Below are positions 10,697 through 18,800 of a DNA stretch of 64,000 bases, one piece after another. The translations under genes were made by a program, and so were the position numbers. The first letter of the stretch is position 1; every line of letters begins with the position of its first letter. The notes beneath the pieces are model-generated. The model was not told the DNA's origin and searched no databases. It saw only the letters and a list, made by a program, of their open reading frames with translations. Location: positions 1 through 64,000 of IMG/VR virus record IMGVR_UViG_3300021142_000002. One strand, given 5' to 3'.

Positions 10697-10721
10697 TTAA
10701 TTTTATTTTTTGGTAGGATTT

Positions 10722-13700
10722 ATGAATTTACTCTTAAACCCAACATCGTTTAATCTGTGGTCTTTTAATAAAACGACAGGTGGTGTACCATGCTTTACTA
10801 TTTATAAGGACATTGCTCAAAATCCATTTGGAACAGATAATTTAGCTGATTTAATAGTACCCGATATTAATGCCTATGGTGGGTTATATGAGGATATCAT
10901 TCTCCAGCCAAACACTACTTATTGGTTTTCTTTTTACACGTATACGCCGATTGGTAAATATGTTAGTTTTAGTTTAAATCTAACTCAAGGTGTTAATAGC
11001 ATTTACTGGGATTCTAATACAGGCACTACAACAACAGCAACCACCAAGTATCTATCTTCACCCACTACTTTTACTCAAGGTAGTGGCTATACACCTTCTT
11101 ATCAAGAAGCTACTTATAACAATGTAACCTTAACTTTAGTCTCTGGTACGCCACCTTCCGTTTATCCCGTTGCCAATATTAAAGTCATTAATGGTAGTGT
11201 TAGTACAGTTACCATTGTAACACCAGTTACCGGCGGTGATAACACAACTATTTATACAGCTACTAGCAATCTATTAGGTGGGACTGGATCTGGATTTACT
11301 TATAGCGCTAGTACCTCCACTATAATAGGTGGAGGCGGTTATACACCTTTATGTACAACTGTTTATCCTAATGTTACTTTAACTTATGTTTCAGGTACTA
11401 TTGTTACTACCCTACCTACGGCTAACATTACAGTGACTGCAGGTAAAGTGGTTAATGTAGCCTTGGTAAATAATCCAGTCGGTGGGGATATTACTACACT
11501 ATATTCAGTAGCGCCTTCTTCTATTGGTGGAACAGGTAGTGGGTTTAGTATTAGTCATTCTGCATTAACTGGATTAACACCTTATACCAGAATAGTTTGG
11601 AATTTGACTACGCCTAGTACTTTTGTTAATACATCCACTACTCGTGTTACTATTAATATTAGTGCGCCTTACCCGCAAATAGCTAATGCCTCTCAAGTCG
11701 TTATTTGGGGCGGGGTACTGGATACTAGTAATACTGGCTATGTTGAAACCAATATGTCTTATGGCATGTTAGGTATGGATGATGATACTGTACTGAGTAA
11801 TACGGTCTCTATTGATTTAAAGGATAGCTCAGGTAATCTGATTACTACACCATTTGATCCAGCTAGGTATAGGGTACATAATTACAATTTATTGCCCTTT
11901 CCAGACTCTTATGATTTAACTAAATGGACTTATACTAAATCTACTCTAAATACAGTCACTGCATTAAATAATTTAGTAGCAGGTAGTGGTTATGCGGACG
12001 GTGTTTATAATAACGTACAATTAGTTTATAACTCAGGTACAGCTGTTACAACATGTCCTGTTGTAAATATTACTGTTTATAATGGATCAGTATCTTCTGT
12101 TACTCTAGTCACTAATGGTTCTGGCATTACGAGCACTACCACTACCTTTACATGCAGTAATACACTGCTTGGAAATAAAGGATCTGGGTTTAGCATAGCA
12201 GTAGGCACGATTGGTTCTCAAGCTGGATTAACTATTACTAATAGTCTATATGAGAATCCTGGTAATACCTCTAAATTAACTAGCCTAGTCGTATCAGATA
12301 CAGGTAGTTATGGCGGTGTTAGTAAAGCTATTACAGTGTCTGCTGGAGCTACCTATACATTAACCTTTAGTGCTAACAGAATAAATCCTAATGGTAGTAG
12401 CTTTGCACTGCGCTTAAGGGTAAGTATTAATAACTTAAGTACTAATCTTTATTTAAATAATACAGCTACCAGTGGATATCAAACCAATTATGATAACTTT
12501 GTAACCGCAGCAACGGCTTGGACTACTTACACTTATACCTATACTGTGCCTGCTAATATTAGCAGTAATGCAGCTACCTTAGTTGTCTATATGACAGGTG
12601 CTACTAGCATTGTGTTTTATGGGTTTAATAATGTCTTAGGTAATGTACCTATTTCTTATTTAGAGCCTTATTTATTTTCATATAACTTTAATGGTTATGG
12701 AATAGATGATGACTCAGCTAGTGATACCCGCTTCCCATCTATTGATTTATACAACTCTAATCATGAGCTAACAACAGTACCTTTTGACCCTTATAGATTA
12801 GCACAGACTACTTACTTAGGGAAAAACTATTTTCCATGGGGAAATACTATCGGTAAGTTAGTTAACAATGCTTTCTTATATACTGTTAATACAAGTGTTG
12901 GAACACAGATCATTAATGACGTAGCGACGCCGCCTGCCGATATTGTTAATAACCCAGCTTACTTAGGCAATGCTGCTGATCTAATACAAGCGCCTAATGA
13001 TCCTACGTTAATTGGTAGTTATTTTAGCACACCTTTATCTTGGAATCTATTGCCTGCTTTAACTATAGGAAAACAATATGTTATTTCCTGTTGGGTAATG
13101 TCTAAGTACTTACCGTTAACAGGAACTATGTCAGTAAGTCCAGGTGGTAATTGGAATACAGGTTTACAGGTTCAAGGCTCTGAAGGTAATTTAGCTGATC
13201 CATCATGGAAAACATTAAATGGTAGTTATTCTATCATTTTACAAAATGATAGTAATAATGCAGGTTTATACAATGACATGGGTATTCCTAATGTAATACC
13301 TACTAATGAGTTATTGTTTACTAAACGAGCTGACCAAATTAGAGCCATTAGTAATAATGGCTCTACTAGTCTGTTAGTACAAGGCTGGACTAATAGTACC
13401 GTTTATGATATCTCTACAGCAACGAGTCTACCTACTGAAATTGCTAATATTAAATCATCTGTTTTAATCTATCAAGAATTAGCGTATGATCCCAATACCA
13501 GTAGCTACAATTATGATCTATGGGCTAAATATGCTGCCGATTACTCGTATGTAAATGGCAATGGAAATACAATTGTTGCATTAGATTCTACTAAACTAGC
13601 TTCTATTACAGCATGGGCTGTTATTTACCCAATGAAAGATGGTACTAAGGTGGTTAAGATATTCCAGTTCTATGGTACCCTATTTGGGGATACCTGGAGA

Positions 13701-16700
13701 TATCAATCTACTCAGGCTTATAGCCTTTATGACTCTGTTAATCAAGATTTAACTAAGCCCGTAGGCTATGGTTTCTTTTTTACCGGTTATTTATCTATTT
13801 ATGGTGGTATTAGGATTTATGATAATAGTAGTAAGACTACACCTACTAATATCAGTATCCTACCCAATGTCTGGACTAGGGTATCTTTACCATTTACAGC
13901 TACTCTACCTATGAATAACTTAACTCATTTTCTAGATAGACCTGGGAATAATGCAGGACCTTTATTTACTCAGAATACTAATTCCTGGACTATTACAGCT
14001 TTTATGCCTACTAATCCAAATGATGGTATTCATACGCCATGGTCACCTTTATACAGTAGTTATTACATCTATGGAATAATGATTAATGAAGGGACTGTGC
14101 CTTCAGTATATTTTCCTGATCCTTATCAGTTATATGCCTATAGCTTTCCAGGTATTGACTCAGAAGTTTATAATAGCTCACATACACTGCAACATGTTAA
14201 TGGCCCTAGCAAGATAACCTCAGGTGGAATATTAGCTGAAGATGAATATCCTCATCATCACATTGGTATAGATGTAGCAGGTTGTAGTTATTATGGAACT
14301 GCTAAAATATTTCTTAATTTAATGAAGTTAAGTAATGCAAGTCCTGTACTCACTGTAAATGATCCAACTGGCACATGGCCTGCTCAGTCGACTACACTCT
14401 GGAGACTCTATAGATCTTTATCGGTTAATAACATTGATACTTCTAGTAATGTATTAGGTACTCGTCTAATATTAAATGGTGTAGTCTTTACTACGGGTTC
14501 AACGACGATGACTTCCCCTAGTAATAATGGTGATAGTTGGTGGAGTTTTGATCCCACTAATTTAGTTAGATTATTAATTGGCACTAATGTGGCCAACAAT
14601 ACTAAAGTAGTTTCTTTTACTGTTAATAACACGACTAACTTGGTTACTTGGGTAGTTGATACTCCCTTTACAGGAAACAGTAGTGGTCAATATGGTATTA
14701 AGGCAGAGCTTATAGATGATTATACTATTTTGAATTTAGATTCAGATGGTTATCCTAGAAACTTACCGGTTGGTTATTATCTATATTCTTTAGTCTATAG
14801 AACAACACCAATATCATTTTTATTATTTTTAAATCCAGTAGCACAGCTGAATCATCCTATTTTACCAACAGGTTATTATACAGTTACTTGGGATGGCGAG
14901 GGCATTGTTGCCTTAGAGACCGATGTAGCTATTTTACCTAAACAGTATCCTGCCACTTTAATATCTTCTACTTCAAATAGTGCCTTATATTACGTCGATA
15001 CCAGTGGTAGTGCTGCCTTTACTACCTATACTAATATTACCTTAAGTTATAGTAGTGGCACACGGCCTTCTGTAATGCCCGTGGCAACACTTTGTGTGGA
15101 TTACTATGCAAAGTATGTATCAGCAGTTTTTGTGACTACAGCGCCTACTGGAGGCGATGCAAATACTGTTTATACAGTAGATAATACTTTAATGGGTGGT
15201 ACTGGAAATGGCTTTATCTGTAAGATAGATACTAGCAATCATAATAAGGTAACTATCCCTTGGGGTGGTCAAAACTATACGGCTAACACCAAGACATCCG
15301 CTAGTTTTAAATACTATAGAGGCTATGATACTAATGGTAATTTAACACTGCAAGGTTATACTGCTTTAAACTCTGAGACAGGTATTTTTACTATCATTAA
15401 AAGTAGTAATCCTAATAACAATGGAAACTATGTTAGAAATATTAAAGTCTTTGAAACTCAATATGCTGATTTAGTTAATGCTGGTGATATTTTTTATCCA
15501 GATTTTATTAATAGATTAGCTGATTTTAAATGCTTAAGATTTCTAGACTGGATGGCAGGTAATAGCTATCAGTACTTAACATCTATTAATAGTTTAACTA
15601 CTGAGTCTCATGTATCATGGGCTAATGGTAATATGGTGCCCTTATCTGTTATTATTGGCTTGTGTAATTTAGTTAAGAAAGATTGCTGGATTAACATACC
15701 CGTTTATTCCTCGGATGGGGATGCTTATTATTGGTATATTGCTAATCTATTTCAAAGTACTTTAGATCCCTCATTAAGACTTTATATTGAATATGGCAAT
15801 GAGCAGTGGAATGGTGGACTAGGACCTGGTTATTGGATTACTCAAGCGGCTACCTTTTATGGGTATGATAGCACTAAGGTATATTCAAATCCACCTAATT
15901 TGCTATGGTATAATCACATGTTTGCATATGCTATTTTATCTCAAAAAGTATTTAATATCTTTGCTAATGTATTTATCGGCTGTAGGAATAAACTCAATCC
16001 TCCAAGACTATGGGATAATCCTAAGAATCAAAAAAGACGATTATTTAGATGTTTAAGTACCATGCAGGGTAGTCAATCCATTACTTCTCAAATATGGTCC
16101 TTTGCATTGCCTTACTGTACTGCGGACTTTAATATTCCGTATGATGTTATTACACCTGCAGGCTATTATGACATTATAGGTGATGCAACAGTTAATGCTA
16201 ATACGTTAGCAGCATCTCCCAATGAGTGGCCTTGGACTAAAGAAGAATTAGAGCCTATCTTTGCAACCTCTTTAAATAATCAGACTAGTCAAGAAACAGC
16301 AGCAGCAATAGGTATTTTATCCAGTACTATTAGCACTGGCAGTAATGGCGTATTAGGTAGAGACAGTACAGGCGATCTATACAGTCCACTTATTTGTATG
16401 TATGAAGGAGGATTCGGTAGTGCCGGACCTAGCCCTTTAATGCTACAAGCTATTATGCAGTTATGCTTTGAAGAAGATGCACCCACTAACACTGTTTATA
16501 ATCTATCATTACAGCAATTTAATTGGTGGACTAATACCATGTTGCCTATGATGAGTAACTGTGATCTAGATGCCGCTGTTTATAACCAATGGGAAAGTAG
16601 TGTACAGTGGGCATCCAGTGGACAATGGGGTTTATCTGATAAGAGCAATTATACTGATACTCAGTATTATCAATTTCCAAGGCCTAGACTCTATAGTCAA

Positions 16701-16892
16701 ACGGCTGGTAGAATGGGAATGCCTACTATTACTATACCTATTTCACCTAGTAATACATATACGAGTAAACCCATGGTCTATGTTAATAATAGCTGGGTTT
16801 ATATGAGTAATTTTTATATGTATAACAATAGCTATTTTGCTAAAGTAGGTGCGCCTTCTTTAAGTTATTGGAATACATTAGTTTGGAAGTAA
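10722..16892 (+). CDS. Large multidomain virion protein with carbohydrate-binding-like modules and a C-terminal clan GH-A-like glycoside hydrolase domain
   Basis: ATG 10722 after AGGA. CBM-like segments (VSAGATYTLTFSA...WTTYTYTYTVP). Four GGTGxGF-type modules. C-terminal FYPDFINRLADFKCLRFLDWM, WINIP, YIEYGNEQWN and MYEGG motifs. Confidence 0.65.
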   Translation: MNLLLNPTSFNLWSFNKTTGGVPCFTIYKDIAQNPFGTDNLADLIVPDINAYGGLYEDIILQPNTTYWFSFYTYTPIGKYVSFSLNLTQGVNSIYWDSNTGTTTTATTKYLSSPTTFTQGSGYTPSYQEATYNNVTLTLVSGTPPSVYPVANIKVINGSVSTVTIVTPVTGGDNTTIYTATSNLLGGTGSGFTYSASTSTIIGGGGYTPLCTTVYPNVTLTYVSGTIVTTLPTANITVTAGKVVNVALVNNPVGGDITTLYSVAPSSIGGTGSGFSISHSALTGLTPYTRIVWNLTTPSTFVNTSTTRVTINISAPYPQIANASQVVIWGGVLDTSNTGYVETNMSYGMLGMDDDTVLSNTVSIDLKDSSGNLITTPFDPARYRVHNYNLLPFPDSYDLTKWTYTKSTLNTVTALNNLVAGSGYADGVYNNVQLVYNSGTAVTTCPVVNITVYNGSVSSVTLVTNGSGITSTTTTFTCSNTLLGNKGSGFSIAVGTIGSQAGLTITNSLYENPGNTSKLTSLVVSDTGSYGGVSKAITVSAGATYTLTFSANRINPNGSSFALRLRVSINNLSTNLYLNNTATSGYQTNYDNFVTAATAWTTYTYTYTVPANISSNAATLVVYMTGATSIVFYGFNNVLGNVPISYLEPYLFSYNFNGYGIDDDSASDTRFPSIDLYNSNHELTTVPFDPYRLAQTTYLGKNYFPWGNTIGKLVNNAFLYTVNTSVGTQIINDVATPPADIVNNPAYLGNAADLIQAPNDPTLIGSYFSTPLSWNLLPALTIGKQYVISCWVMSKYLPLTGTMSVSPGGNWNTGLQVQGSEGNLADPSWKTLNGSYSIILQNDSNNAGLYNDMGIPNVIPTNELLFTKRADQIRAISNNGSTSLLVQGWTNSTVYDISTATSLPTEIANIKSSVLIYQELAYDPNTSSYNYDLWAKYAADYSYVNGNGNTIVALDSTKLASITAWAVIYPMKDGTKVVKIFQFYGTLFGDTWRYQSTQAYSLYDSVNQDLTKPVGYGFFFTGYLSIYGGIRIYDNSSKTTPTNISILPNVWTRVSLPFTATLPMNNLTHFLDRPGNNAGPLFTQNTNSWTITAFMPTNPNDGIHTPWSPLYSSYYIYGIMINEGTVPSVYFPDPYQLYAYSFPGIDSEVYNSSHTLQHVNGPSKITSGGILAEDEYPHHHIGIDVAGCSYYGTAKIFLNLMKLSNASPVLTVNDPTGTWPAQSTTLWRLYRSLSVNNIDTSSNVLGTRLILNGVVFTTGSTTMTSPSNNGDSWWSFDPTNLVRLLIGTNVANNTKVVSFTVNNTTNLVTWVVDTPFTGNSSGQYGIKAELIDDYTILNLDSDGYPRNLPVGYYLYSLVYRTTPISFLLFLNPVAQLNHPILPTGYYTVTWDGEGIVALETDVAILPKQYPATLISSTSNSALYYVDTSGSAAFTTYTNITLSYSSGTRPSVMPVATLCVDYYAKYVSAVFVTTAPTGGDANTVYTVDNTLMGGTGNGFICKIDTSNHNKVTIPWGGQNYTANTKTSASFKYYRGYDTNGNLTLQGYTALNSETGIFTIIKSSNPNNNGNYVRNIKVFETQYADLVNAGDIFYPDFINRLADFKCLRFLDWMAGNSYQYLTSINSLTTESHVSWANGNMVPLSVIIGLCNLVKKDCWINIPVYSSDGDAYYWYIANLFQSTLDPSLRLYIEYGNEQWNGGLGPGYWITQAATFYGYDSTKVYSNPPNLLWYNHMFAYAILSQKVFNIFANVFIGCRNKLNPPRLWDNPKNQKRRLFRCLSTMQGSQSITSQIWSFALPYCTADFNIPYDVITPAGYYDIIGDATVNANTLAASPNEWPWTKEELEPIFATSLNNQTSQETAAAIGILSSTISTGSNGVLGRDSTGDLYSPLICMYEGGFGSAGPSPLMLQAIMQLCFEEDAPTNTVYNLSLQQFNWWTNTMLPMMSNCDLDAAVYNQWESSVQWASSGQWGLSDKSNYTDTQYYQFPRPRLYSQTAGRMGMPTITIPISPSNTYTSKPMVYVNNSWVYMSNFYMYNNSYFAKVGAPSLSYWNTLVWK

Positions 16893-16929
16893 TTTGTTTT
16901 AACCTTTAATTACCTGGATATTGAAAAAT

Positions 16930-17343
16930 ATGAAAAAATTTATTAAGCTTATGATTATTGCTAATTTTGTTAATTTTTTAGCAAGTTGTTCAGTAACAGA
17001 TTCTCTAATTAAAAAAGAAGAAGCTTTAATTATCCCAACCATTACAGCTATTAATAAAGTAGCTATTGAAACTATCTGTAGTCAACCAGAAGATACTAGA
17101 GTAGTTGCTTTAGTAAATATGGTTAATTCTGAAATTAAACCTAATACCTTAAGTATAAGTTGTCCACAACAAGTTATTAGTACAGTTAACTTACCTACTT
17201 TAAAACCTTTTTCTAAACTACAGTTAACCGCTATTAAAGGTAGTGTATTAACTTACTGTACTGACCCACTATTAGCTGGGGGCATTTTAACAGAAGTCAA
17301 TACTGTACTCAGCCCAATTAGTGTATCTATTACCTGTAATTAA
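16930..17343 (+). CDS. Predicted lipoprotein
   Basis: MKKFIKLMIIANFVNFLAS-C: basic N-terminus, hydrophobic stretch and LASC lipobox. Two internal Cys-pair repeats (TIC...ISC, TYC...ITC). Confidence 0.6.
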   Translation: MKKFIKLMIIANFVNFLASCSVTDSLIKKEEALIIPTITAINKVAIETICSQPEDTRVVALVNMVNSEIKPNTLSISCPQQVISTVNLPTLKPFSKLQLTAIKGSVLTYCTDPLLAGGILTEVNTVLSPISVSITCN

Positions 17344-17353
17344 AATTTATGAG

Positions 17354-17392
17354 GTGAGTTAATACTGTGCCAAAAGGCAGTCTTTAACTCAC
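17354..17392. other. Imperfect hairpin in the 5' region of the 17410 gene
   Basis: GTGAGTTAA...GCC-AAAA-GGC...TTAACTCAC. Confidence 0.4.
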
Positions 17393-17409
17393 TAAATGGG
17401 AATTAATAA

Positions 17410-18078
17410 ATGTCAGAATATAAACAATACATCGGTGTTAAATTAGTAGAAGCTTTTGAAAGAGCAGCGACTGAAGAAGATAGACGCGGTGTACATCCAG
17501 TGGGTGCTCTAGGTTATCAGGTTAAATACCCAGATGGTTATTTATCTTGGTGCCCAAAGGTCGAGTTTGAAAAATACAATCGTCAAGTAAGTGGCTTAAC
17601 CTACGGCATGGCTAATACAGTTACTAAAGAGCATATTGATAGTATTATCATTGACGAGCAATATAGTCGCGTTATAGGTACTACTATCACTCATTGTGCC
17701 TTAACATTGCTAAACGGGTTTGTGGTAACAGGTGAATCGTCTTGTGTTGATGCTACCATTTTTAATAAAGCAATGGGTGAGAAATACGCCAGAGAAAAAG
17801 CTTATGAGAAAATATGGGAATTAGAAGGCTATCTTTTAAAACAAAAAATGTATGAGCAAAACCAAACTTATACCTTTGAAGAAGCGATTAAATTATTAGA
17901 TAGTGGAAAAACAATATCTCCTGTATCTTTTCCTAGCGTATCTTTCTTTAAAGGTATTGCTGGTCCTATCTATGGAACAGCTGCTGGCGAGGAGGCCTAC
18001 TTCATTAACAGAAATAATAAAATAGCTTTATTTAAGCTAGAAGAGTTTGTCAAAGAAGATAAGTATATCGTAGTATAA
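17410..18078 (+). CDS. Fusion protein: YIGxK N-terminal domain + N4 Gp49/Sf6 gp66 family domain + DUF2829-like C-terminal segment (candidate nucleotide-signal sponge)
   Basis: KQYIGVKLVEA...GYQVKYPDGYLSWCPKxxFEK. TVTKEHID...TxCxLTLxNGFxVTGESSCVD...FxxxxGEKYA...IWELEGYLLK. TFEEAIKLLDSGK. Confidence 0.7.
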   Translation: MSEYKQYIGVKLVEAFERAATEEDRRGVHPVGALGYQVKYPDGYLSWCPKVEFEKYNRQVSGLTYGMANTVTKEHIDSIIIDEQYSRVIGTTITHCALTLLNGFVVTGESSCVDATIFNKAMGEKYAREKAYEKIWELEGYLLKQKMYEQNQTYTFEEAIKLLDSGKTISPVSFPSVSFFKGIAGPIYGTAAGEEAYFINRNNKIALFKLEEFVKEDKYIVV

Positions 18079-18094
18079 AAACGTTCTAACAATG

Positions 18095-18139
18095 TATCAG
18101 ATGCGTTAGATACTCAAAAGGTATCTAACGCATCTGATA
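18095..18139. terminator. 19-bp inverted repeat with 7-nt loop
   Basis: TATCAGATGCGTTAGATAC-tcaaaag-GTATCTAACGCATCTGATA. Confidence 0.7.
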
Positions 18140-18158
18140 TGTTCCTAATTTAAGAGAC

Positions 18159-18800
18159 TTGATTATGAAAAAGTTAATCGGATTATTAATCCTACTGTTT
18201 AGTAGTGCTGTCTTTTCAGCACCTATACAGAAATCAATAACAACGAAGAAACAACATAGTAGTCACGTCGTATCTTTTATAAAGAATGAAAGCAAAGTGA
18301 CAGAAGTACTTTCGATCTTTAATGCCAATAAACAATACGATGATTCATTTAAACAGTCGAGTAACCAATATTCACTTGACTATCGGCTACTCAAAGTAGT
18401 CTGCACTGTAGAATCAAAACTAAAGTATGATGCAGTATCTAAAGAAGGTGCAATTGGACTTTGTCAACTTATGCCAAAGACTTGGAATAACATAAAGAAA
18501 ATCAGTAAGAAGAAATTAAATAAAATAAAAGATCCTCATCAATCTATTCATGCAGCTGCCACTTATTTTAATTATTTAGATAATTTTTGGAGAAATATAG
18601 ATAATAAAGAAAACCGCATTAAATTAGTTCTGGCGAGTTATAATGCTGGGGAAGGTAATATATCCAGATCTAAGAAAAAATGTCGTAGTGGCGATTACAG
18701 AGCGATTATGGGGTGTTTAAAGAGCTTTACTAGTAAGAAATCTGAAGAAACTAAAAATTATGTAGATTTAGTAATGAGTAGTTATTATAGGGTGATTTAA
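18159..18800 (+). CDS. Lytic transglycosylase (SLT domain) with N-terminal signal peptide
   Basis: Catalytic VES, AVSxxGAIGLCQLMPxT, ASYNAGEG and ETxNYV motifs. N-terminal MKKLIGLLILLFSSAVFS-A. Confidence 0.85.
   Translation: MIMKKLIGLLILLFSSAVFSAPIQKSITTKKQHSSHVVSFIKNESKVTEVLSIFNANKQYDDSFKQSSNQYSLDYRLLKVVCTVESKLKYDAVSKEGAIGLCQLMPKTWNNIKKISKKKLNKIKDPHQSIHAAATYFNYLDNFWRNIDNKENRIKLVLASYNAGEGNISRSKKKCRSGDYRAIMGCLKSFTSKKSEETKNYVDLVMSSYYRVI

What the first reader, a model, noticed from the sequence alone, without database searches (positions are those of the whole stretch)
17410..18078. Three-part fusion of candidate immune-signal sponge domains
Seen: residues ~1-60 form the YIGxK...GYxVxYPDGYxSWxPK domain that often precedes DUF2829. 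Next comes SGLTYGMA, which looks like the first residues of a DUF2829 domain cut short. A complete N4 Gp49/Sf6 gp66-type domain follows, then a second DUF2829-like start (TFEEAIKLLDSGK) with a diverged tail. Established: DUF2829 corresponds to the Tad2 sponge family. My recollection is that the Gp49/66 family corresponds to the Acb4 sponge; this needs verifying. Inference: a shuffled multi-sponge able to absorb Thoeris and CBASS signals, with an N-terminal domain that may be a further sponge.
Basis: partly seen in the sequence, partly recalled or inferred. Interest (0 to 1): 0.7.

Follow-up and report, generated by a model that had tools for sequence, protein, structure and literature searches.

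The report
Mosaic Acb4 sponge with decayed Tad2
A freshwater jumbo phage encodes a 222-residue patchwork protein with one intact anti-CBASS "sponge" domain (Acb4), an accessory head domain shared by many phage sponges, and only the wreck of a second (anti-Thoeris, Tad2) sponge, so it is probably a single-target rather than a multi-target immune-signal absorber.

Summary
The middle (residues 67-150) is a bona fide Acb4 domain. It scores 91 bits on PF13876 against a cut-off of 27, its model superposes on SPO1 Acb4 (9E4W) at 1.5 Å, and it is predicted to form the Acb4-type tetramer (ipSAE 0.80, best control 0.01). The recollection "Gp49/66 = Acb4" is correct.

The N-terminal domain (1-60) has no Pfam entry. 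It is homologous to the N-terminal domain of the published RyR Tad sponge gp68 (hhalign 97.8%). That domain alone had no anti-Thoeris activity and forms a domain-swapped dimer. In viral contigs it heads Tad2, Acb4 and Sequestin proteins and also occurs alone.

`SGLTYG` (61-66) is a genuine remnant of a Tad2 start. Of the C-terminal part, only residues ~152-173 (Tad2 helix α1) are recognisably Tad2. The last ~50 residues have no detectable relative anywhere, and residues 148-222 contain no tryptophan, so the tryptophans that bind gcADPR in Tad2 are absent.

Verdict: a new mosaic variant of known fusion sponges, most likely anti-CBASS only. The "multi-sponge" reading is only partly supported.

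The parts
17410..18078 (+). Whole ORF, 222 aa plus stop (P0001): mosaic sponge-family protein
   Evidence: An identical copy lies on a second IMG/VR contig. Freshwater metagenome contigs laid on it (three runs, together covering most of the gene) are letter-for-letter identical.
17410..17589 (+). N-domain (residues 1-60): small SH3/Tudor-like beta-rich module with no Pfam family, homologous to the N-terminal domain of RyR Tad gp68
   Evidence: AF2 pLDDT 86. No significant PDB match. Profile hit in gp68 at E 9.1e-13, hhalign 97.8%, BLASTP 38% identity at E 6e-7. Partners in viral contigs are Tad2, Acb4, Sequestin, or none.
17590..17607 (+). Remnant of a Tad2 helix-alpha1 start (residues 61-66, SGLTYG): a scar of an ancestral N-domain-Tad2 gene
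   Evidence: Positional match to N-domain-Tad2 junctions. The motif is specific to that architecture: 12/20 against 0/48.
17608..17859 (+). Acb4 domain (residues 67-150). M67-ANTVTKEH resembles the native N-terminus of Acb4-Tad2 proteins
   Evidence: PF13876 91.1 bits. Profile reaches 9E4W at E 1.4e-9. AF2 pLDDT >90. Foldseek to 9E4W: probability 1.00, rmsd 1.5 A. Tetramer ipSAE 0.80 against 0.01. N-termini of Pm86, P0004 and P0007.
17863..17928 (+). Tad2-like helix alpha1 and the start of beta1 (residues 152-173): the only recognisable piece of the second Tad2
   Evidence: BLASTP to Pm86 Acb4-Tad2 continues to residue 180. hhalign 22.2 against shuffles 9.9 +/- 2.2. hmmsearch aligns 152-170. 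AF2 helix 156-164, pLDDT about 78.
17929..18075 (+). Orphan C-terminal tail (residues 174-222): no detectable relative and no Trp; possibly a decayed mini Tad2 beta-sheet
   Evidence: Only self plus two repeat-inflated chance hits among 1.84 billion representatives, and none in 5.8 billion clusters. hhalign at chance. No similarity to mini-Tad2 variants. No frameshifted remnant. AF2 pLDDT 43-53. Atlas gives lead-level hits only: features 0.80, TM 0.65 to a 67-aa cluster that is 23% PF11195.
17347..17399 (+). Upstream intergenic hairpin
   Evidence: dG -19.8 kcal/mol, z -4.3, 0/200 shuffles.
18091..18143 (+). Downstream 24-bp perfect hairpin (no T-run)
   Evidence: dG -34 kcal/mol, z -8.7, 0/200 shuffles.

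Best explanation
The gene encodes an Acb4-family cyclic-dinucleotide sponge.

How it works:
- Its central domain assembles into the pinwheel tetramer typical of Acb4.
- The tetramer sequesters CBASS signals (3'3'-cGAMP-type dinucleotides), so the host's CBASS effector is not switched on.
- The N-terminal domain is an accessory, probably dimerising, module that many phage sponges carry.
- The C-terminal part is the decayed remainder of a Tad2 sponge and most likely no longer binds Thoeris signals.

How it arose: the protein looks like the product of joining an N-domain-Tad2 gene, cut six residues into its Tad2, to the start codon of an Acb4-Tad2 fusion gene. The surviving Tad2 then degenerated after its first helix.

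Shown here: domain identities, the fold, the predicted tetramer, and the loss of Tad2 hallmarks. Inferred: ligand binding, the role of the N-domain, and the order of events.
For: Acb4 domain:
- PF13876 at 91 bits against a cut-off of 27.
- Profile hit to the crystal structure 9E4W.
- Confident model superposing at 1.5 A.
- Predicted homotetramer with ipSAE 0.80, best control 0.01, run agreement >=65% and partner pLDDT >=69. The mark was reached by 20 of 30 proteins solved as pairs of one chain and by 1 of 23 solved as single chains. These counts hold only roughly here, because my own alignment and four copies were used.
- The confident contacts (residues 84-111 sheet to sheet; 101-104 with 137-149) are the two interface types described for SPO1 Acb4.
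- Pocket positions F104, F118 and N119 equal SPO1 F48, F62 and N63. The other positions carry the residues typical of its closest relatives.
- All eight Acb4 homologs tested in the literature bound 3'3'-cGAMP.
- The Pm86 Acb4-Tad2 fusion, 45% identical over residues 67-180, blocked CBASS and Thoeris in vivo.

N-domain:
- Homologous to gp68_N, which was inactive alone and dimerises.

Tad2 decay:
-.

Mosaic origin:
- Junction motifs.
Against: - No binding or phage-rescue data exist for this protein.
- Several SPO1 ligand contacts differ (E49->V105, Y57->V113, T70->Y126), so ligand specificity is uncertain.
- The tetramer pass may reflect the model's memory of 9E4W.
- The gene lies at the end of a late-looking structural gene block rather than in an early anti-defence island, and no promoter was identified.
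- The intact, clonally conserved 50-residue tail could mean it still has a function that sequence methods cannot see.
- Atlas structure hits hint that a Tad2-like sheet persists.
Confidence: 0.6

Rival explanations
1. One reading: a true multi-sponge. Acb4 absorbs CBASS signals, the C-terminal Tad2-like domain still absorbs Thoeris signals (gcADPR or His-ADPR), and the N-domain may be a third sponge.
For: - Acb4-Tad2, Acb4-Sequestin and Sequestin-Tad2 fusions exist, and two have been shown to be dual inhibitors.
- The Tad2 helix alpha1 is retained.
- The tail has roughly the length of mini-Tad2 variants.
- The low-confidence beta-beta-alpha order at its end resembles Tad2 beta4-beta5-alpha3.
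- Atlas structure TM 0.65/0.59 to a short viral cluster that is partly PF11195.
- The N-domain associates with at least four sponge families.
Against: - No Pfam Tad2 hit even at E<=10.
- The tail is at chance against canonical and mini Tad2.
- Both ligand-stacking tryptophans and the GWN and SQxD motifs are absent.
- No confident oligomer contacts lie beyond residue 149.
- gp68_N alone had no anti-Thoeris I activity.
Confidence: 0.15
2. Neofunctionalised tail: the C-terminal 70 residues are a new small domain, derived from Tad2 or replacing it. It would bind a different signal or a host protein, or modulate the Acb4 tetramer.
For: - The reading frame is intact and identical across several freshwater samples.
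- There is no frameshift debris.
- Tad2 homologs are known to have shifted ligands, for example to cUMP/cCMP or His-ADPR.
Against: - There are no homologs at all, so no evidence of selection.
- AF2 confidence is low.
- The population is clonal, so conservation across samples says nothing about constraint.
Confidence: 0.15
3. The N-domain is a host-targeting Tudor-like module, for example binding RNA polymerase as the CarD, Mfd and UvrD Tudor domains do, rather than an oligomerisation module.
For: The best structural neighbours include the CarD N-terminal domain, the Mfd RID and the UvrD/PcrA C-terminal Tudor domains, at Z 4.2-4.5 and Foldseek TM 0.56.
Against: - Z<5 is at the noise level stated by the tool.
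- There is no sequence similarity.
- The crystal structure of the homologous gp68_N shows a domain-swapped dimer.
Confidence: 0.05
4. Non-functional chimera: an assembly artefact or a gene in decay.
For: It carries two Tad2 relics and an orphan tail, and has no full-length homolog.
Against: - The same sequence lies on independent contigs from many runs.
- The Acb4 core and interface residues are fully conserved.
- The start matches those of homologs: MSEYKQY against MSELKQY in gp68.
Confidence: 0.05

Closest known systems
Acb4-Tad2 fusion of Pasteurella phage Pm86 (ORF47, 185 aa; Tal et al. 2025 preprint, 10.1101/2025.07.12.664507)
   Same: - The Acb4 domain is followed directly by a Tad2 helix alpha1.
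- 45% identity over window residues 67-180.
- The same native N-terminus motif, M-x-N-x-VTKEH.
- It lies next to lysis genes, as the window gene lies next to an SLT gene.
   Different: - Pm86 has a complete canonical Tad2 (GWNGKG..., ...VPWLASQTDVLAEDW) and no N-domain.
- Its activity against both Thoeris and CBASS was shown experimentally.
- The window protein has only helix alpha1, followed by an orphan tail without Trp.
SPO1 Acb4 (PDB 9E4W; Chang et al., 10.1101/2024.12.30.630793)
   Same: - The same Pfam family.
- The same alpha-beta-beta-beta-alpha core (rmsd 1.5 A over 69 residues).
- The same predicted tetramer interfaces.
- F48, F62 and N63 are conserved.
   Different: - Only about 25% identity.
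- The guanine-reading E49 and the phosphate contacts Y57 and T70 are replaced (V105, V113, Y126).
- SPO1 Acb4 is a stand-alone 96-aa protein of a Gram-positive phage.
RyR Tad, gp68 of Pectobacterium phage vB_PatP_CB1 (10.64898/2026.06.04.730250)
   Same: It carries the same N-terminal domain (hhalign 97.8%, BLASTP 38% identity), placed in front of a sponge domain.
   Different: Its C-terminal partner is a RyR-repeat gcADPR sponge, not Acb4. The protein is a dimer.
Phage N4 gp48 and gp49
   Same: gp48 is Acb4 (47-48% identical in the domain) and gp49 is N-domain + Tad2. These are the same three modules, in adjacent genes.
   Different: In N4 they are two separate proteins, in the order Acb4 then N-domain-Tad2, and the Tad2 is intact.
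crAssphage gp41 (Carjivirus communis KP06_gp41) and other N-domain-Acb4 proteins
   Same: N-domain + Acb4 in one chain, covering window residues 6-148 at 37-38% identity.
   Different: They have no Tad2 remnant at the junction (0/17) and no C-terminal extension.

Membership tests
Acb4 (Pfam PF13876, Phage_gp49_66) | Sequence match to the family HMM above the curated threshold | tested here: met
   91.1 bits against a cut-off of 27, E 6.6e-26, profile positions 1-81 of 82. 93.4 bits in the genome search.
Acb4 (Pfam PF13876, Phage_gp49_66) | Three-stranded antiparallel sheet flanked by helices (dsRBD-like), as in 9E4W | tested here: met
   AF2 pLDDT >90 over residues 70-151. Foldseek to 9E4W: probability 1.00, rmsd 1.5 A over 69 columns, TM (target) 0.73.
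Acb4 (Pfam PF13876, Phage_gp49_66) | Homotetramer built from a beta-sandwich dimer plus a helix-alpha4 'joint' interface | tested here: met
   Prediction only: ipSAE 0.80, best control 0.01. Contacts at residues 84-111 and at 101-104 with 137-149, matching the description read. The pass may be from memory of 9E4W.
Acb4 (Pfam PF13876, Phage_gp49_66) | Ligand-contact residues of SPO1 Acb4 (K36, F48, E49, V56, Y57, F62, N63, I66, T70, K81) | tested here: inconclusive
   F48, F62 and N63 are conserved and I66->M. E49->V, V56->C, Y57->V and T70->Y, but these are the consensus residues of its nearest relatives. K36 and K81 could not be aligned reliably.
Acb4 (Pfam PF13876, Phage_gp49_66) | Binds 3'3'-cGAMP or related CBASS dinucleotides and relieves CBASS | not testable with these tools
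   Needs EMSA, SPR and plaque assays.
Tad2 (Pfam PF11195, DUF2829) | Sequence match to the family HMM | tested here: not met
   No hit at E<=10 on the whole protein, on 147-222 or on 55-222, and none in the genome search. My 74-sequence HMM gives 2.3 bits over residues 152-170 only.
Tad2 (Pfam PF11195, DUF2829) | N-terminal helix alpha1 (the tetramerisation helix) | tested here: met
   hhalign 22.2 against shuffles 9.9 +/- 2.2, 0/100. BLASTP continuity with Pm86 Tad2. AF2 helix 156-164.
Tad2 (Pfam PF11195, DUF2829) | Five-stranded antiparallel sheet after alpha1 | tested here: inconclusive
   The tail is at chance against Tad2 profiles. AF2 pLDDT 43-53. Atlas TM 0.65/0.59 to a short viral cluster that is 23% PF11195 (lead only).
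Tad2 (Pfam PF11195, DUF2829) | gcADPR-contact residues W25, N26, W73, D79 (the GWN and PW...D motifs) | tested here: not met
   Residues 148-222 contain no tryptophan and neither motif. The residues come from the paper read. They are invariant in my Tad2 alignment.
N-terminal domain of RyR Tad gp68 (unnamed fold; no Pfam) | Sequence homology to gp68 residues ~1-70 | tested here: met
   Profile hit within gp68 at E 9.1e-13. hhalign 97.8%, E 7.6e-13. BLASTP E 6e-7.
N-terminal domain of RyR Tad gp68 (unnamed fold; no Pfam) | Domain-swapped dimer forming a five-stranded sheet | not tested
   Only a monomer was modelled: four strands and two short helices, pLDDT 86.
Sequestin (Pfam PF21825) | Sequence match to the family HMM | tested here: not met
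   No hit in the protein or its pieces or in the genome. The N-domain is beta-rich, not the helical Sequestin fold.

The most novel reading that the evidence does not exclude
Two readings remain open.

(1) The N-domain is itself an undiscovered ligand-binding (sponge or sensor) module for a signal not yet tested. It has no Pfam entry, so it is invisible to the Pfam-architecture screen that found Sequestin. It sits at the front of Tad2, Acb4, Sequestin and RyR Tad proteins and also occurs as 48-84-aa stand-alone ORFs.

(2) The orphan tail is a re-tuned mini-Tad2 that binds a non-canonical signal.

Either would make this protein a genuine multi-signal absorber with a new binding fold.
Probability: 0.12. 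Interest if true: 0.75.

Novelty: new variant of a known kind. Interest (0 to 1): 0.42.

Why it matters
Fusion sponges are a recent theme in phage counter-defence.

- This protein shows that such fusions are made by recombination between existing two-domain sponge genes, leaving a six-residue Tad2 scar.
- It also shows that a fused domain can decay afterwards, so counting domains by eye overestimates a phage's anti-defence breadth.
- The N-terminal module turned out to be one of the most frequent partners of sponge domains: Tad2, Acb4, Sequestin and RyR Tad.
- That module has no database family, and only one negative activity test is published. It is a concrete, cheap target for biochemical work on how sponges assemble, or on whether another signal is bound.

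Tried and rejected
- **N-domain related to Acb4.** MAFFT placed N-domain pieces onto the Acb4 region, suggesting a relationship. hhalign of the two profiles gave probability 1.4%, so it is an alignment artefact.
- **Hits to the C-terminal 75 aa among 1.84 billion representatives.** The two hits (P0056, P0057) are repeat-inflated chance matches to a `GIAGPIYG`-type motif.
- **Frameshifted Tad2 remnant.** None in other frames or downstream.
- **Bridging the tail to Tad2 through short Tad2 variants (L159-L161, P0054).** z-scores ran from -0.9 to 1.1.
- **Polymorphism to test selection on the tail.** All metagenome pieces are identical.
- **N-domain against the PDB.** Nothing significant by sequence profile, by Foldseek (best E 0.2; weak repeated SPO1 Tad2 hits at TM 0.41) or by VIA-align (best Z 4.5).
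- **A canonical N-domain-Acb4-Tad2 protein.** None among 68 N-domain proteins, 71 nearest Acb4 proteins or 605 phage records. An Atlas cluster (255 aa, Acb4+Tad2, 711 members) with an N-domain-like fold could not be verified, because the tool returns no sequences.
- **Promoter scan.** Fewer sigma-70-like sites than in shuffles.
- **Full-length AF2 model.** Not attempted with a composite MSA, because MAFFT misaligned the pieces. The protein was folded in two parts instead.

Full report
**1.

- An ORF of 222 codons lies at 17410-18078 on the + strand.
- The window belongs to a 220,366-bp IMG/VR virus record, about 33% G+C and an estimated 75% complete.
- The same DNA turns up in many freshwater and lake metagenome runs. 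An identical copy sits on a second IMG/VR contig.
- The contig pieces laid from three of those runs, which together cover most of the gene, are letter-for-letter identical. The gene is therefore real, but the population is clonal.
- The gene sits at the end of a block of very large + strand genes of 730, 1685, 949 and 2060 aa. The last of these carries a CBM_4_9 carbohydrate-binding module.
- It follows a lipoprotein-like ORF and precedes a secreted SLT transglycosylase. A terminator-like hairpin and a strand switch come next.
- Two strong hairpins bracket the gene: -19.8 kcal/mol (z -4.3) and -34 kcal/mol (z -8.7).

**2. The middle domain is Acb4**

- Pfam gives a single hit, PF13876, covering residues 71-146 at 91.1 bits against a cut-off of 27.
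Chang et al. defined SPO1 Acb4 as the founder of PF13876 and showed that eight of eight homologs bind 3'3'-cGAMP.
- A profile of this domain reaches the crystal structure 9E4W at E 1.4e-9.
- An AlphaFold2 model has pLDDT above 90 over residues 70-151. It superposes on 9E4W at 1.5 Å over 69 residues, with Foldseek probability 1.00.
- Four copies of residues 60-222 are predicted to bind each other: ipSAE 0.80, best control 0.01, run agreement ≥65% and partner pLDDT ≥69.
- In the tool's calibration, that mark was reached by 20 of 30 proteins solved as pairs of one chain and by 1 of 23 solved as single chains. The counts hold only roughly here, because my own alignment and four copies were used.
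- The confident contacts are sheet to sheet (residues 84-111), and the β2-β3 loop against the end of the long helix (101-104 with 137-149). These are the two interfaces described for SPO1 Acb4. The pass may partly be memory of 9E4W.
- Of the SPO1 ligand contacts, F48, F62 and N63 are kept as F104, F118 and N119. E49, V56, Y57, I66 and T70 are V, C, V, M and Y here. These residues are typical of its nearest relatives from phages of Gram-negative hosts.

**3. The N-terminal domain**

- Residues 1-60 have no Pfam or NCBIfam family and no relative in the PDB by sequence profile.
- The model is confident (pLDDT 86) and shows a small SH3/Tudor-like β-rich fold. Fold searches give only noise-level neighbours: Foldseek best E 0.2, VIA-align best Z 4.5.
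- The domain is common. At least 398 viral loci carry its motif and 145 phage records match it, including phage N4 gp49.
- I classified 68 distinct proteins that carry it:

| Architecture | Count |
|---|---|
| N-domain–Tad2 | 20 |
| N-domain–Acb4 | 17 |
| Stand-alone ORF (48-84 aa) | 18 |
| N-domain + another C-terminal part | 13 |

- Among the 20 N-domain–Tad2 proteins, one (L154) is a three-part N-domain–Sequestin–Tad2 protein.
- I scanned six of the 13 "other" proteins with Pfam. Five carry PF21825 (Sequestin) and one is a sub-threshold Acb4.
- Atlas structure neighbours add an Acb2/Tad1-hairpin partner. BFVD adds RyR-domain and MazG partners.
- A 2026 preprint describes RyR Tad (gp68 of Pectobacterium phage vB_PatP_CB1). 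[quoted passage not shown] Alone it had no anti-Thoeris I activity, and in the crystal it forms a domain-swapped dimer.
- My N-domain profile hits exactly that part of gp68 at E 9.1e-13. hhalign gives 97.8%, and the window protein aligns to gp68 directly at 38% identity.
- So the N-domain is an already sighted, unnamed accessory module. It is probably used for oligomerisation, and it has not been shown to be a sponge.

**4. The two Tad2 traces**

*First trace.*
- Directly after the N-domain the window reads `…YNRQVSGLTYGMANTV…`. N-domain–Tad2 proteins read `…AYRPVTGLSFGLAVEALK…` at the same spacing.
- The motif `[LM][ST][FY]G` occurs there in 12/20 N-domain–Tad2 proteins. It occurs in 0/17 N-domain–Acb4 proteins and 0/31 others.
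- From M67 the sequence (`MANTVTKEH`) matches the native N-terminus of Acb4-Tad2 fusions, for example Pm86 `MENRVTKEH`.

*Second trace.*
- After the Acb4 helix, BLASTP against the experimentally validated Pm86 Acb4-Tad2 fusion continues into Tad2 helix α1, up to residue 180. The alignment is 45% identical with E 5e-34.
- Against a 74-sequence Tad2 profile, residues ~152-173 score 22.2, against 9.9 ± 2.2 for shuffles. The remaining 51 residues score 7.9, at chance level.
- Pfam PF11195 finds nothing even at E≤10. A six-sequence Tad2 profile finds every solved Tad2 at 1e-19 to 1e-31, so the method has the power to detect one.
- The tail has no relative among 5.8 billion clusters or 1.84 billion representatives, apart from two repeat artefacts.
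- It carries no frameshifted Tad2 remnant and shows no similarity to short Tad2 variants.
- SPO1 Tad2 binds gcADPR with W25, N26, W73 and D79. Residues 148-222 contain no tryptophan and neither the `GWN` nor the `PW…D` motif.
- AlphaFold2 is unsure about the tail (pLDDT 43-53).
- The Atlas gives only lead-level hints of a short Tad2-like sheet.
- No confident oligomer contact lies beyond residue 149.

**5. Best explanation**

- The protein is an Acb4-type tetrameric cyclic-dinucleotide sponge, so it is anti-CBASS.
- It carries the common N-terminal accessory module and a decayed Tad2.
- It most likely arose by joining an N-domain–Tad2 gene, cut six residues into its Tad2, to the start of an Acb4-Tad2 gene. 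The second Tad2 then eroded.
- Phage N4 shows the same three modules as neighbouring genes, gp48 and gp49.
- No other Tad2, Sequestin, Acb2/Tad1-hairpin or RyR domain is found in the 220-kb record. No recognisable anti-Thoeris sponge is therefore present in the part of the genome that is held.

**6. Novelty**

- Acb4, Tad2, their fusions and the N-domain have all been seen before, so nothing here is categorically new.
- What I did not find elsewhere is this four-piece mosaic. There was no full-length relative, and there was no N-domain–Acb4–Tad2 protein among 68 + 71 sampled proteins or 605 phage records.
- I also did not find a clear recombination scar like this one, or such a documented example of a fused sponge domain decaying.
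- The broader by-product is that the unnamed N-domain is a recurrent partner of at least four sponge families. The Pfam-based fusion screen could not see this.

Noticed in passing
window 10710-16892 (+): A 2060-aa protein with a CBM_4_9 carbohydrate-binding domain (residues 528-627). By eye it holds four copies of a ~60-aa repeat (Y-x-N-[VI]-T-L...SGT...GG[TN]G[SN]GF). It is probably a giant tail fibre or receptor-binding protein, and it has no PHROG hit.
   Followed up: partly
window 16921-17343 (+): A 140-aa ORF with a lipoprotein-type signal (…NFLASC, a lipobox-like motif). It has no family in Pfam or PHROGs and lies directly upstream of the sponge gene.
   Followed up: no
window 18159-18800 (+): An SLT lytic transglycosylase with an N-terminal signal peptide lies immediately downstream. 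Acb4-family genes also sit next to lysis genes in Pasteurella phage Pm86 and in P22-like phage IME10.
   Followed up: partly
window 17347-17399 and 18091-18143: Two unusually stable hairpins bracket the gene (z -4.3 and -8.7). The second is a perfect 24-bp stem without a T-run. Low-depth metagenome contigs break at both. Their function (terminator, processing site or recombination site) is unknown.
   Followed up: partly
L169 (phage N4, NC_008720 33632-34485): In RefSeq numbering, N4 gp48 is the PF13876/Acb4 protein and gp49 is N-domain + DUF2829 (Tad2), although the Pfam family is named 'N4 Gp49'. The two genes overlap by one base.
   Followed up: partly
L159:1078-1695, L160:1030-1695: These proteins have an N-domain, then an unknown ~70-aa middle part, then a short sub-threshold Tad2 variant ending in …LLAEDYKL (22 bits against a cut-off of 25). 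The middle part may be another unrecognised sponge-associated domain.
   Followed up: no
L090, L092, L089, L165 and others: Stand-alone N-domain ORFs of 48-84 aa are frequent in viral contigs (18 of 68 distinct proteins). This mirrors how known sponge domains mostly occur alone.
   Followed up: partly
P0049, P0029: Acb4 domains are also fused to a RyR domain (PF02026, 246 aa) and to a PHP domain (PF02811, 212 aa) in metagenomic proteins. The RyR partner is now known to be a gcADPR sponge.
   Followed up: no
P0007, P0013, P0018: Acb4-Tad2 fusions of 234-235 aa carry a ~50-aa Cys-rich linker (C…C.C motif) between the two sponge domains. It may bind metal.
   Followed up: no
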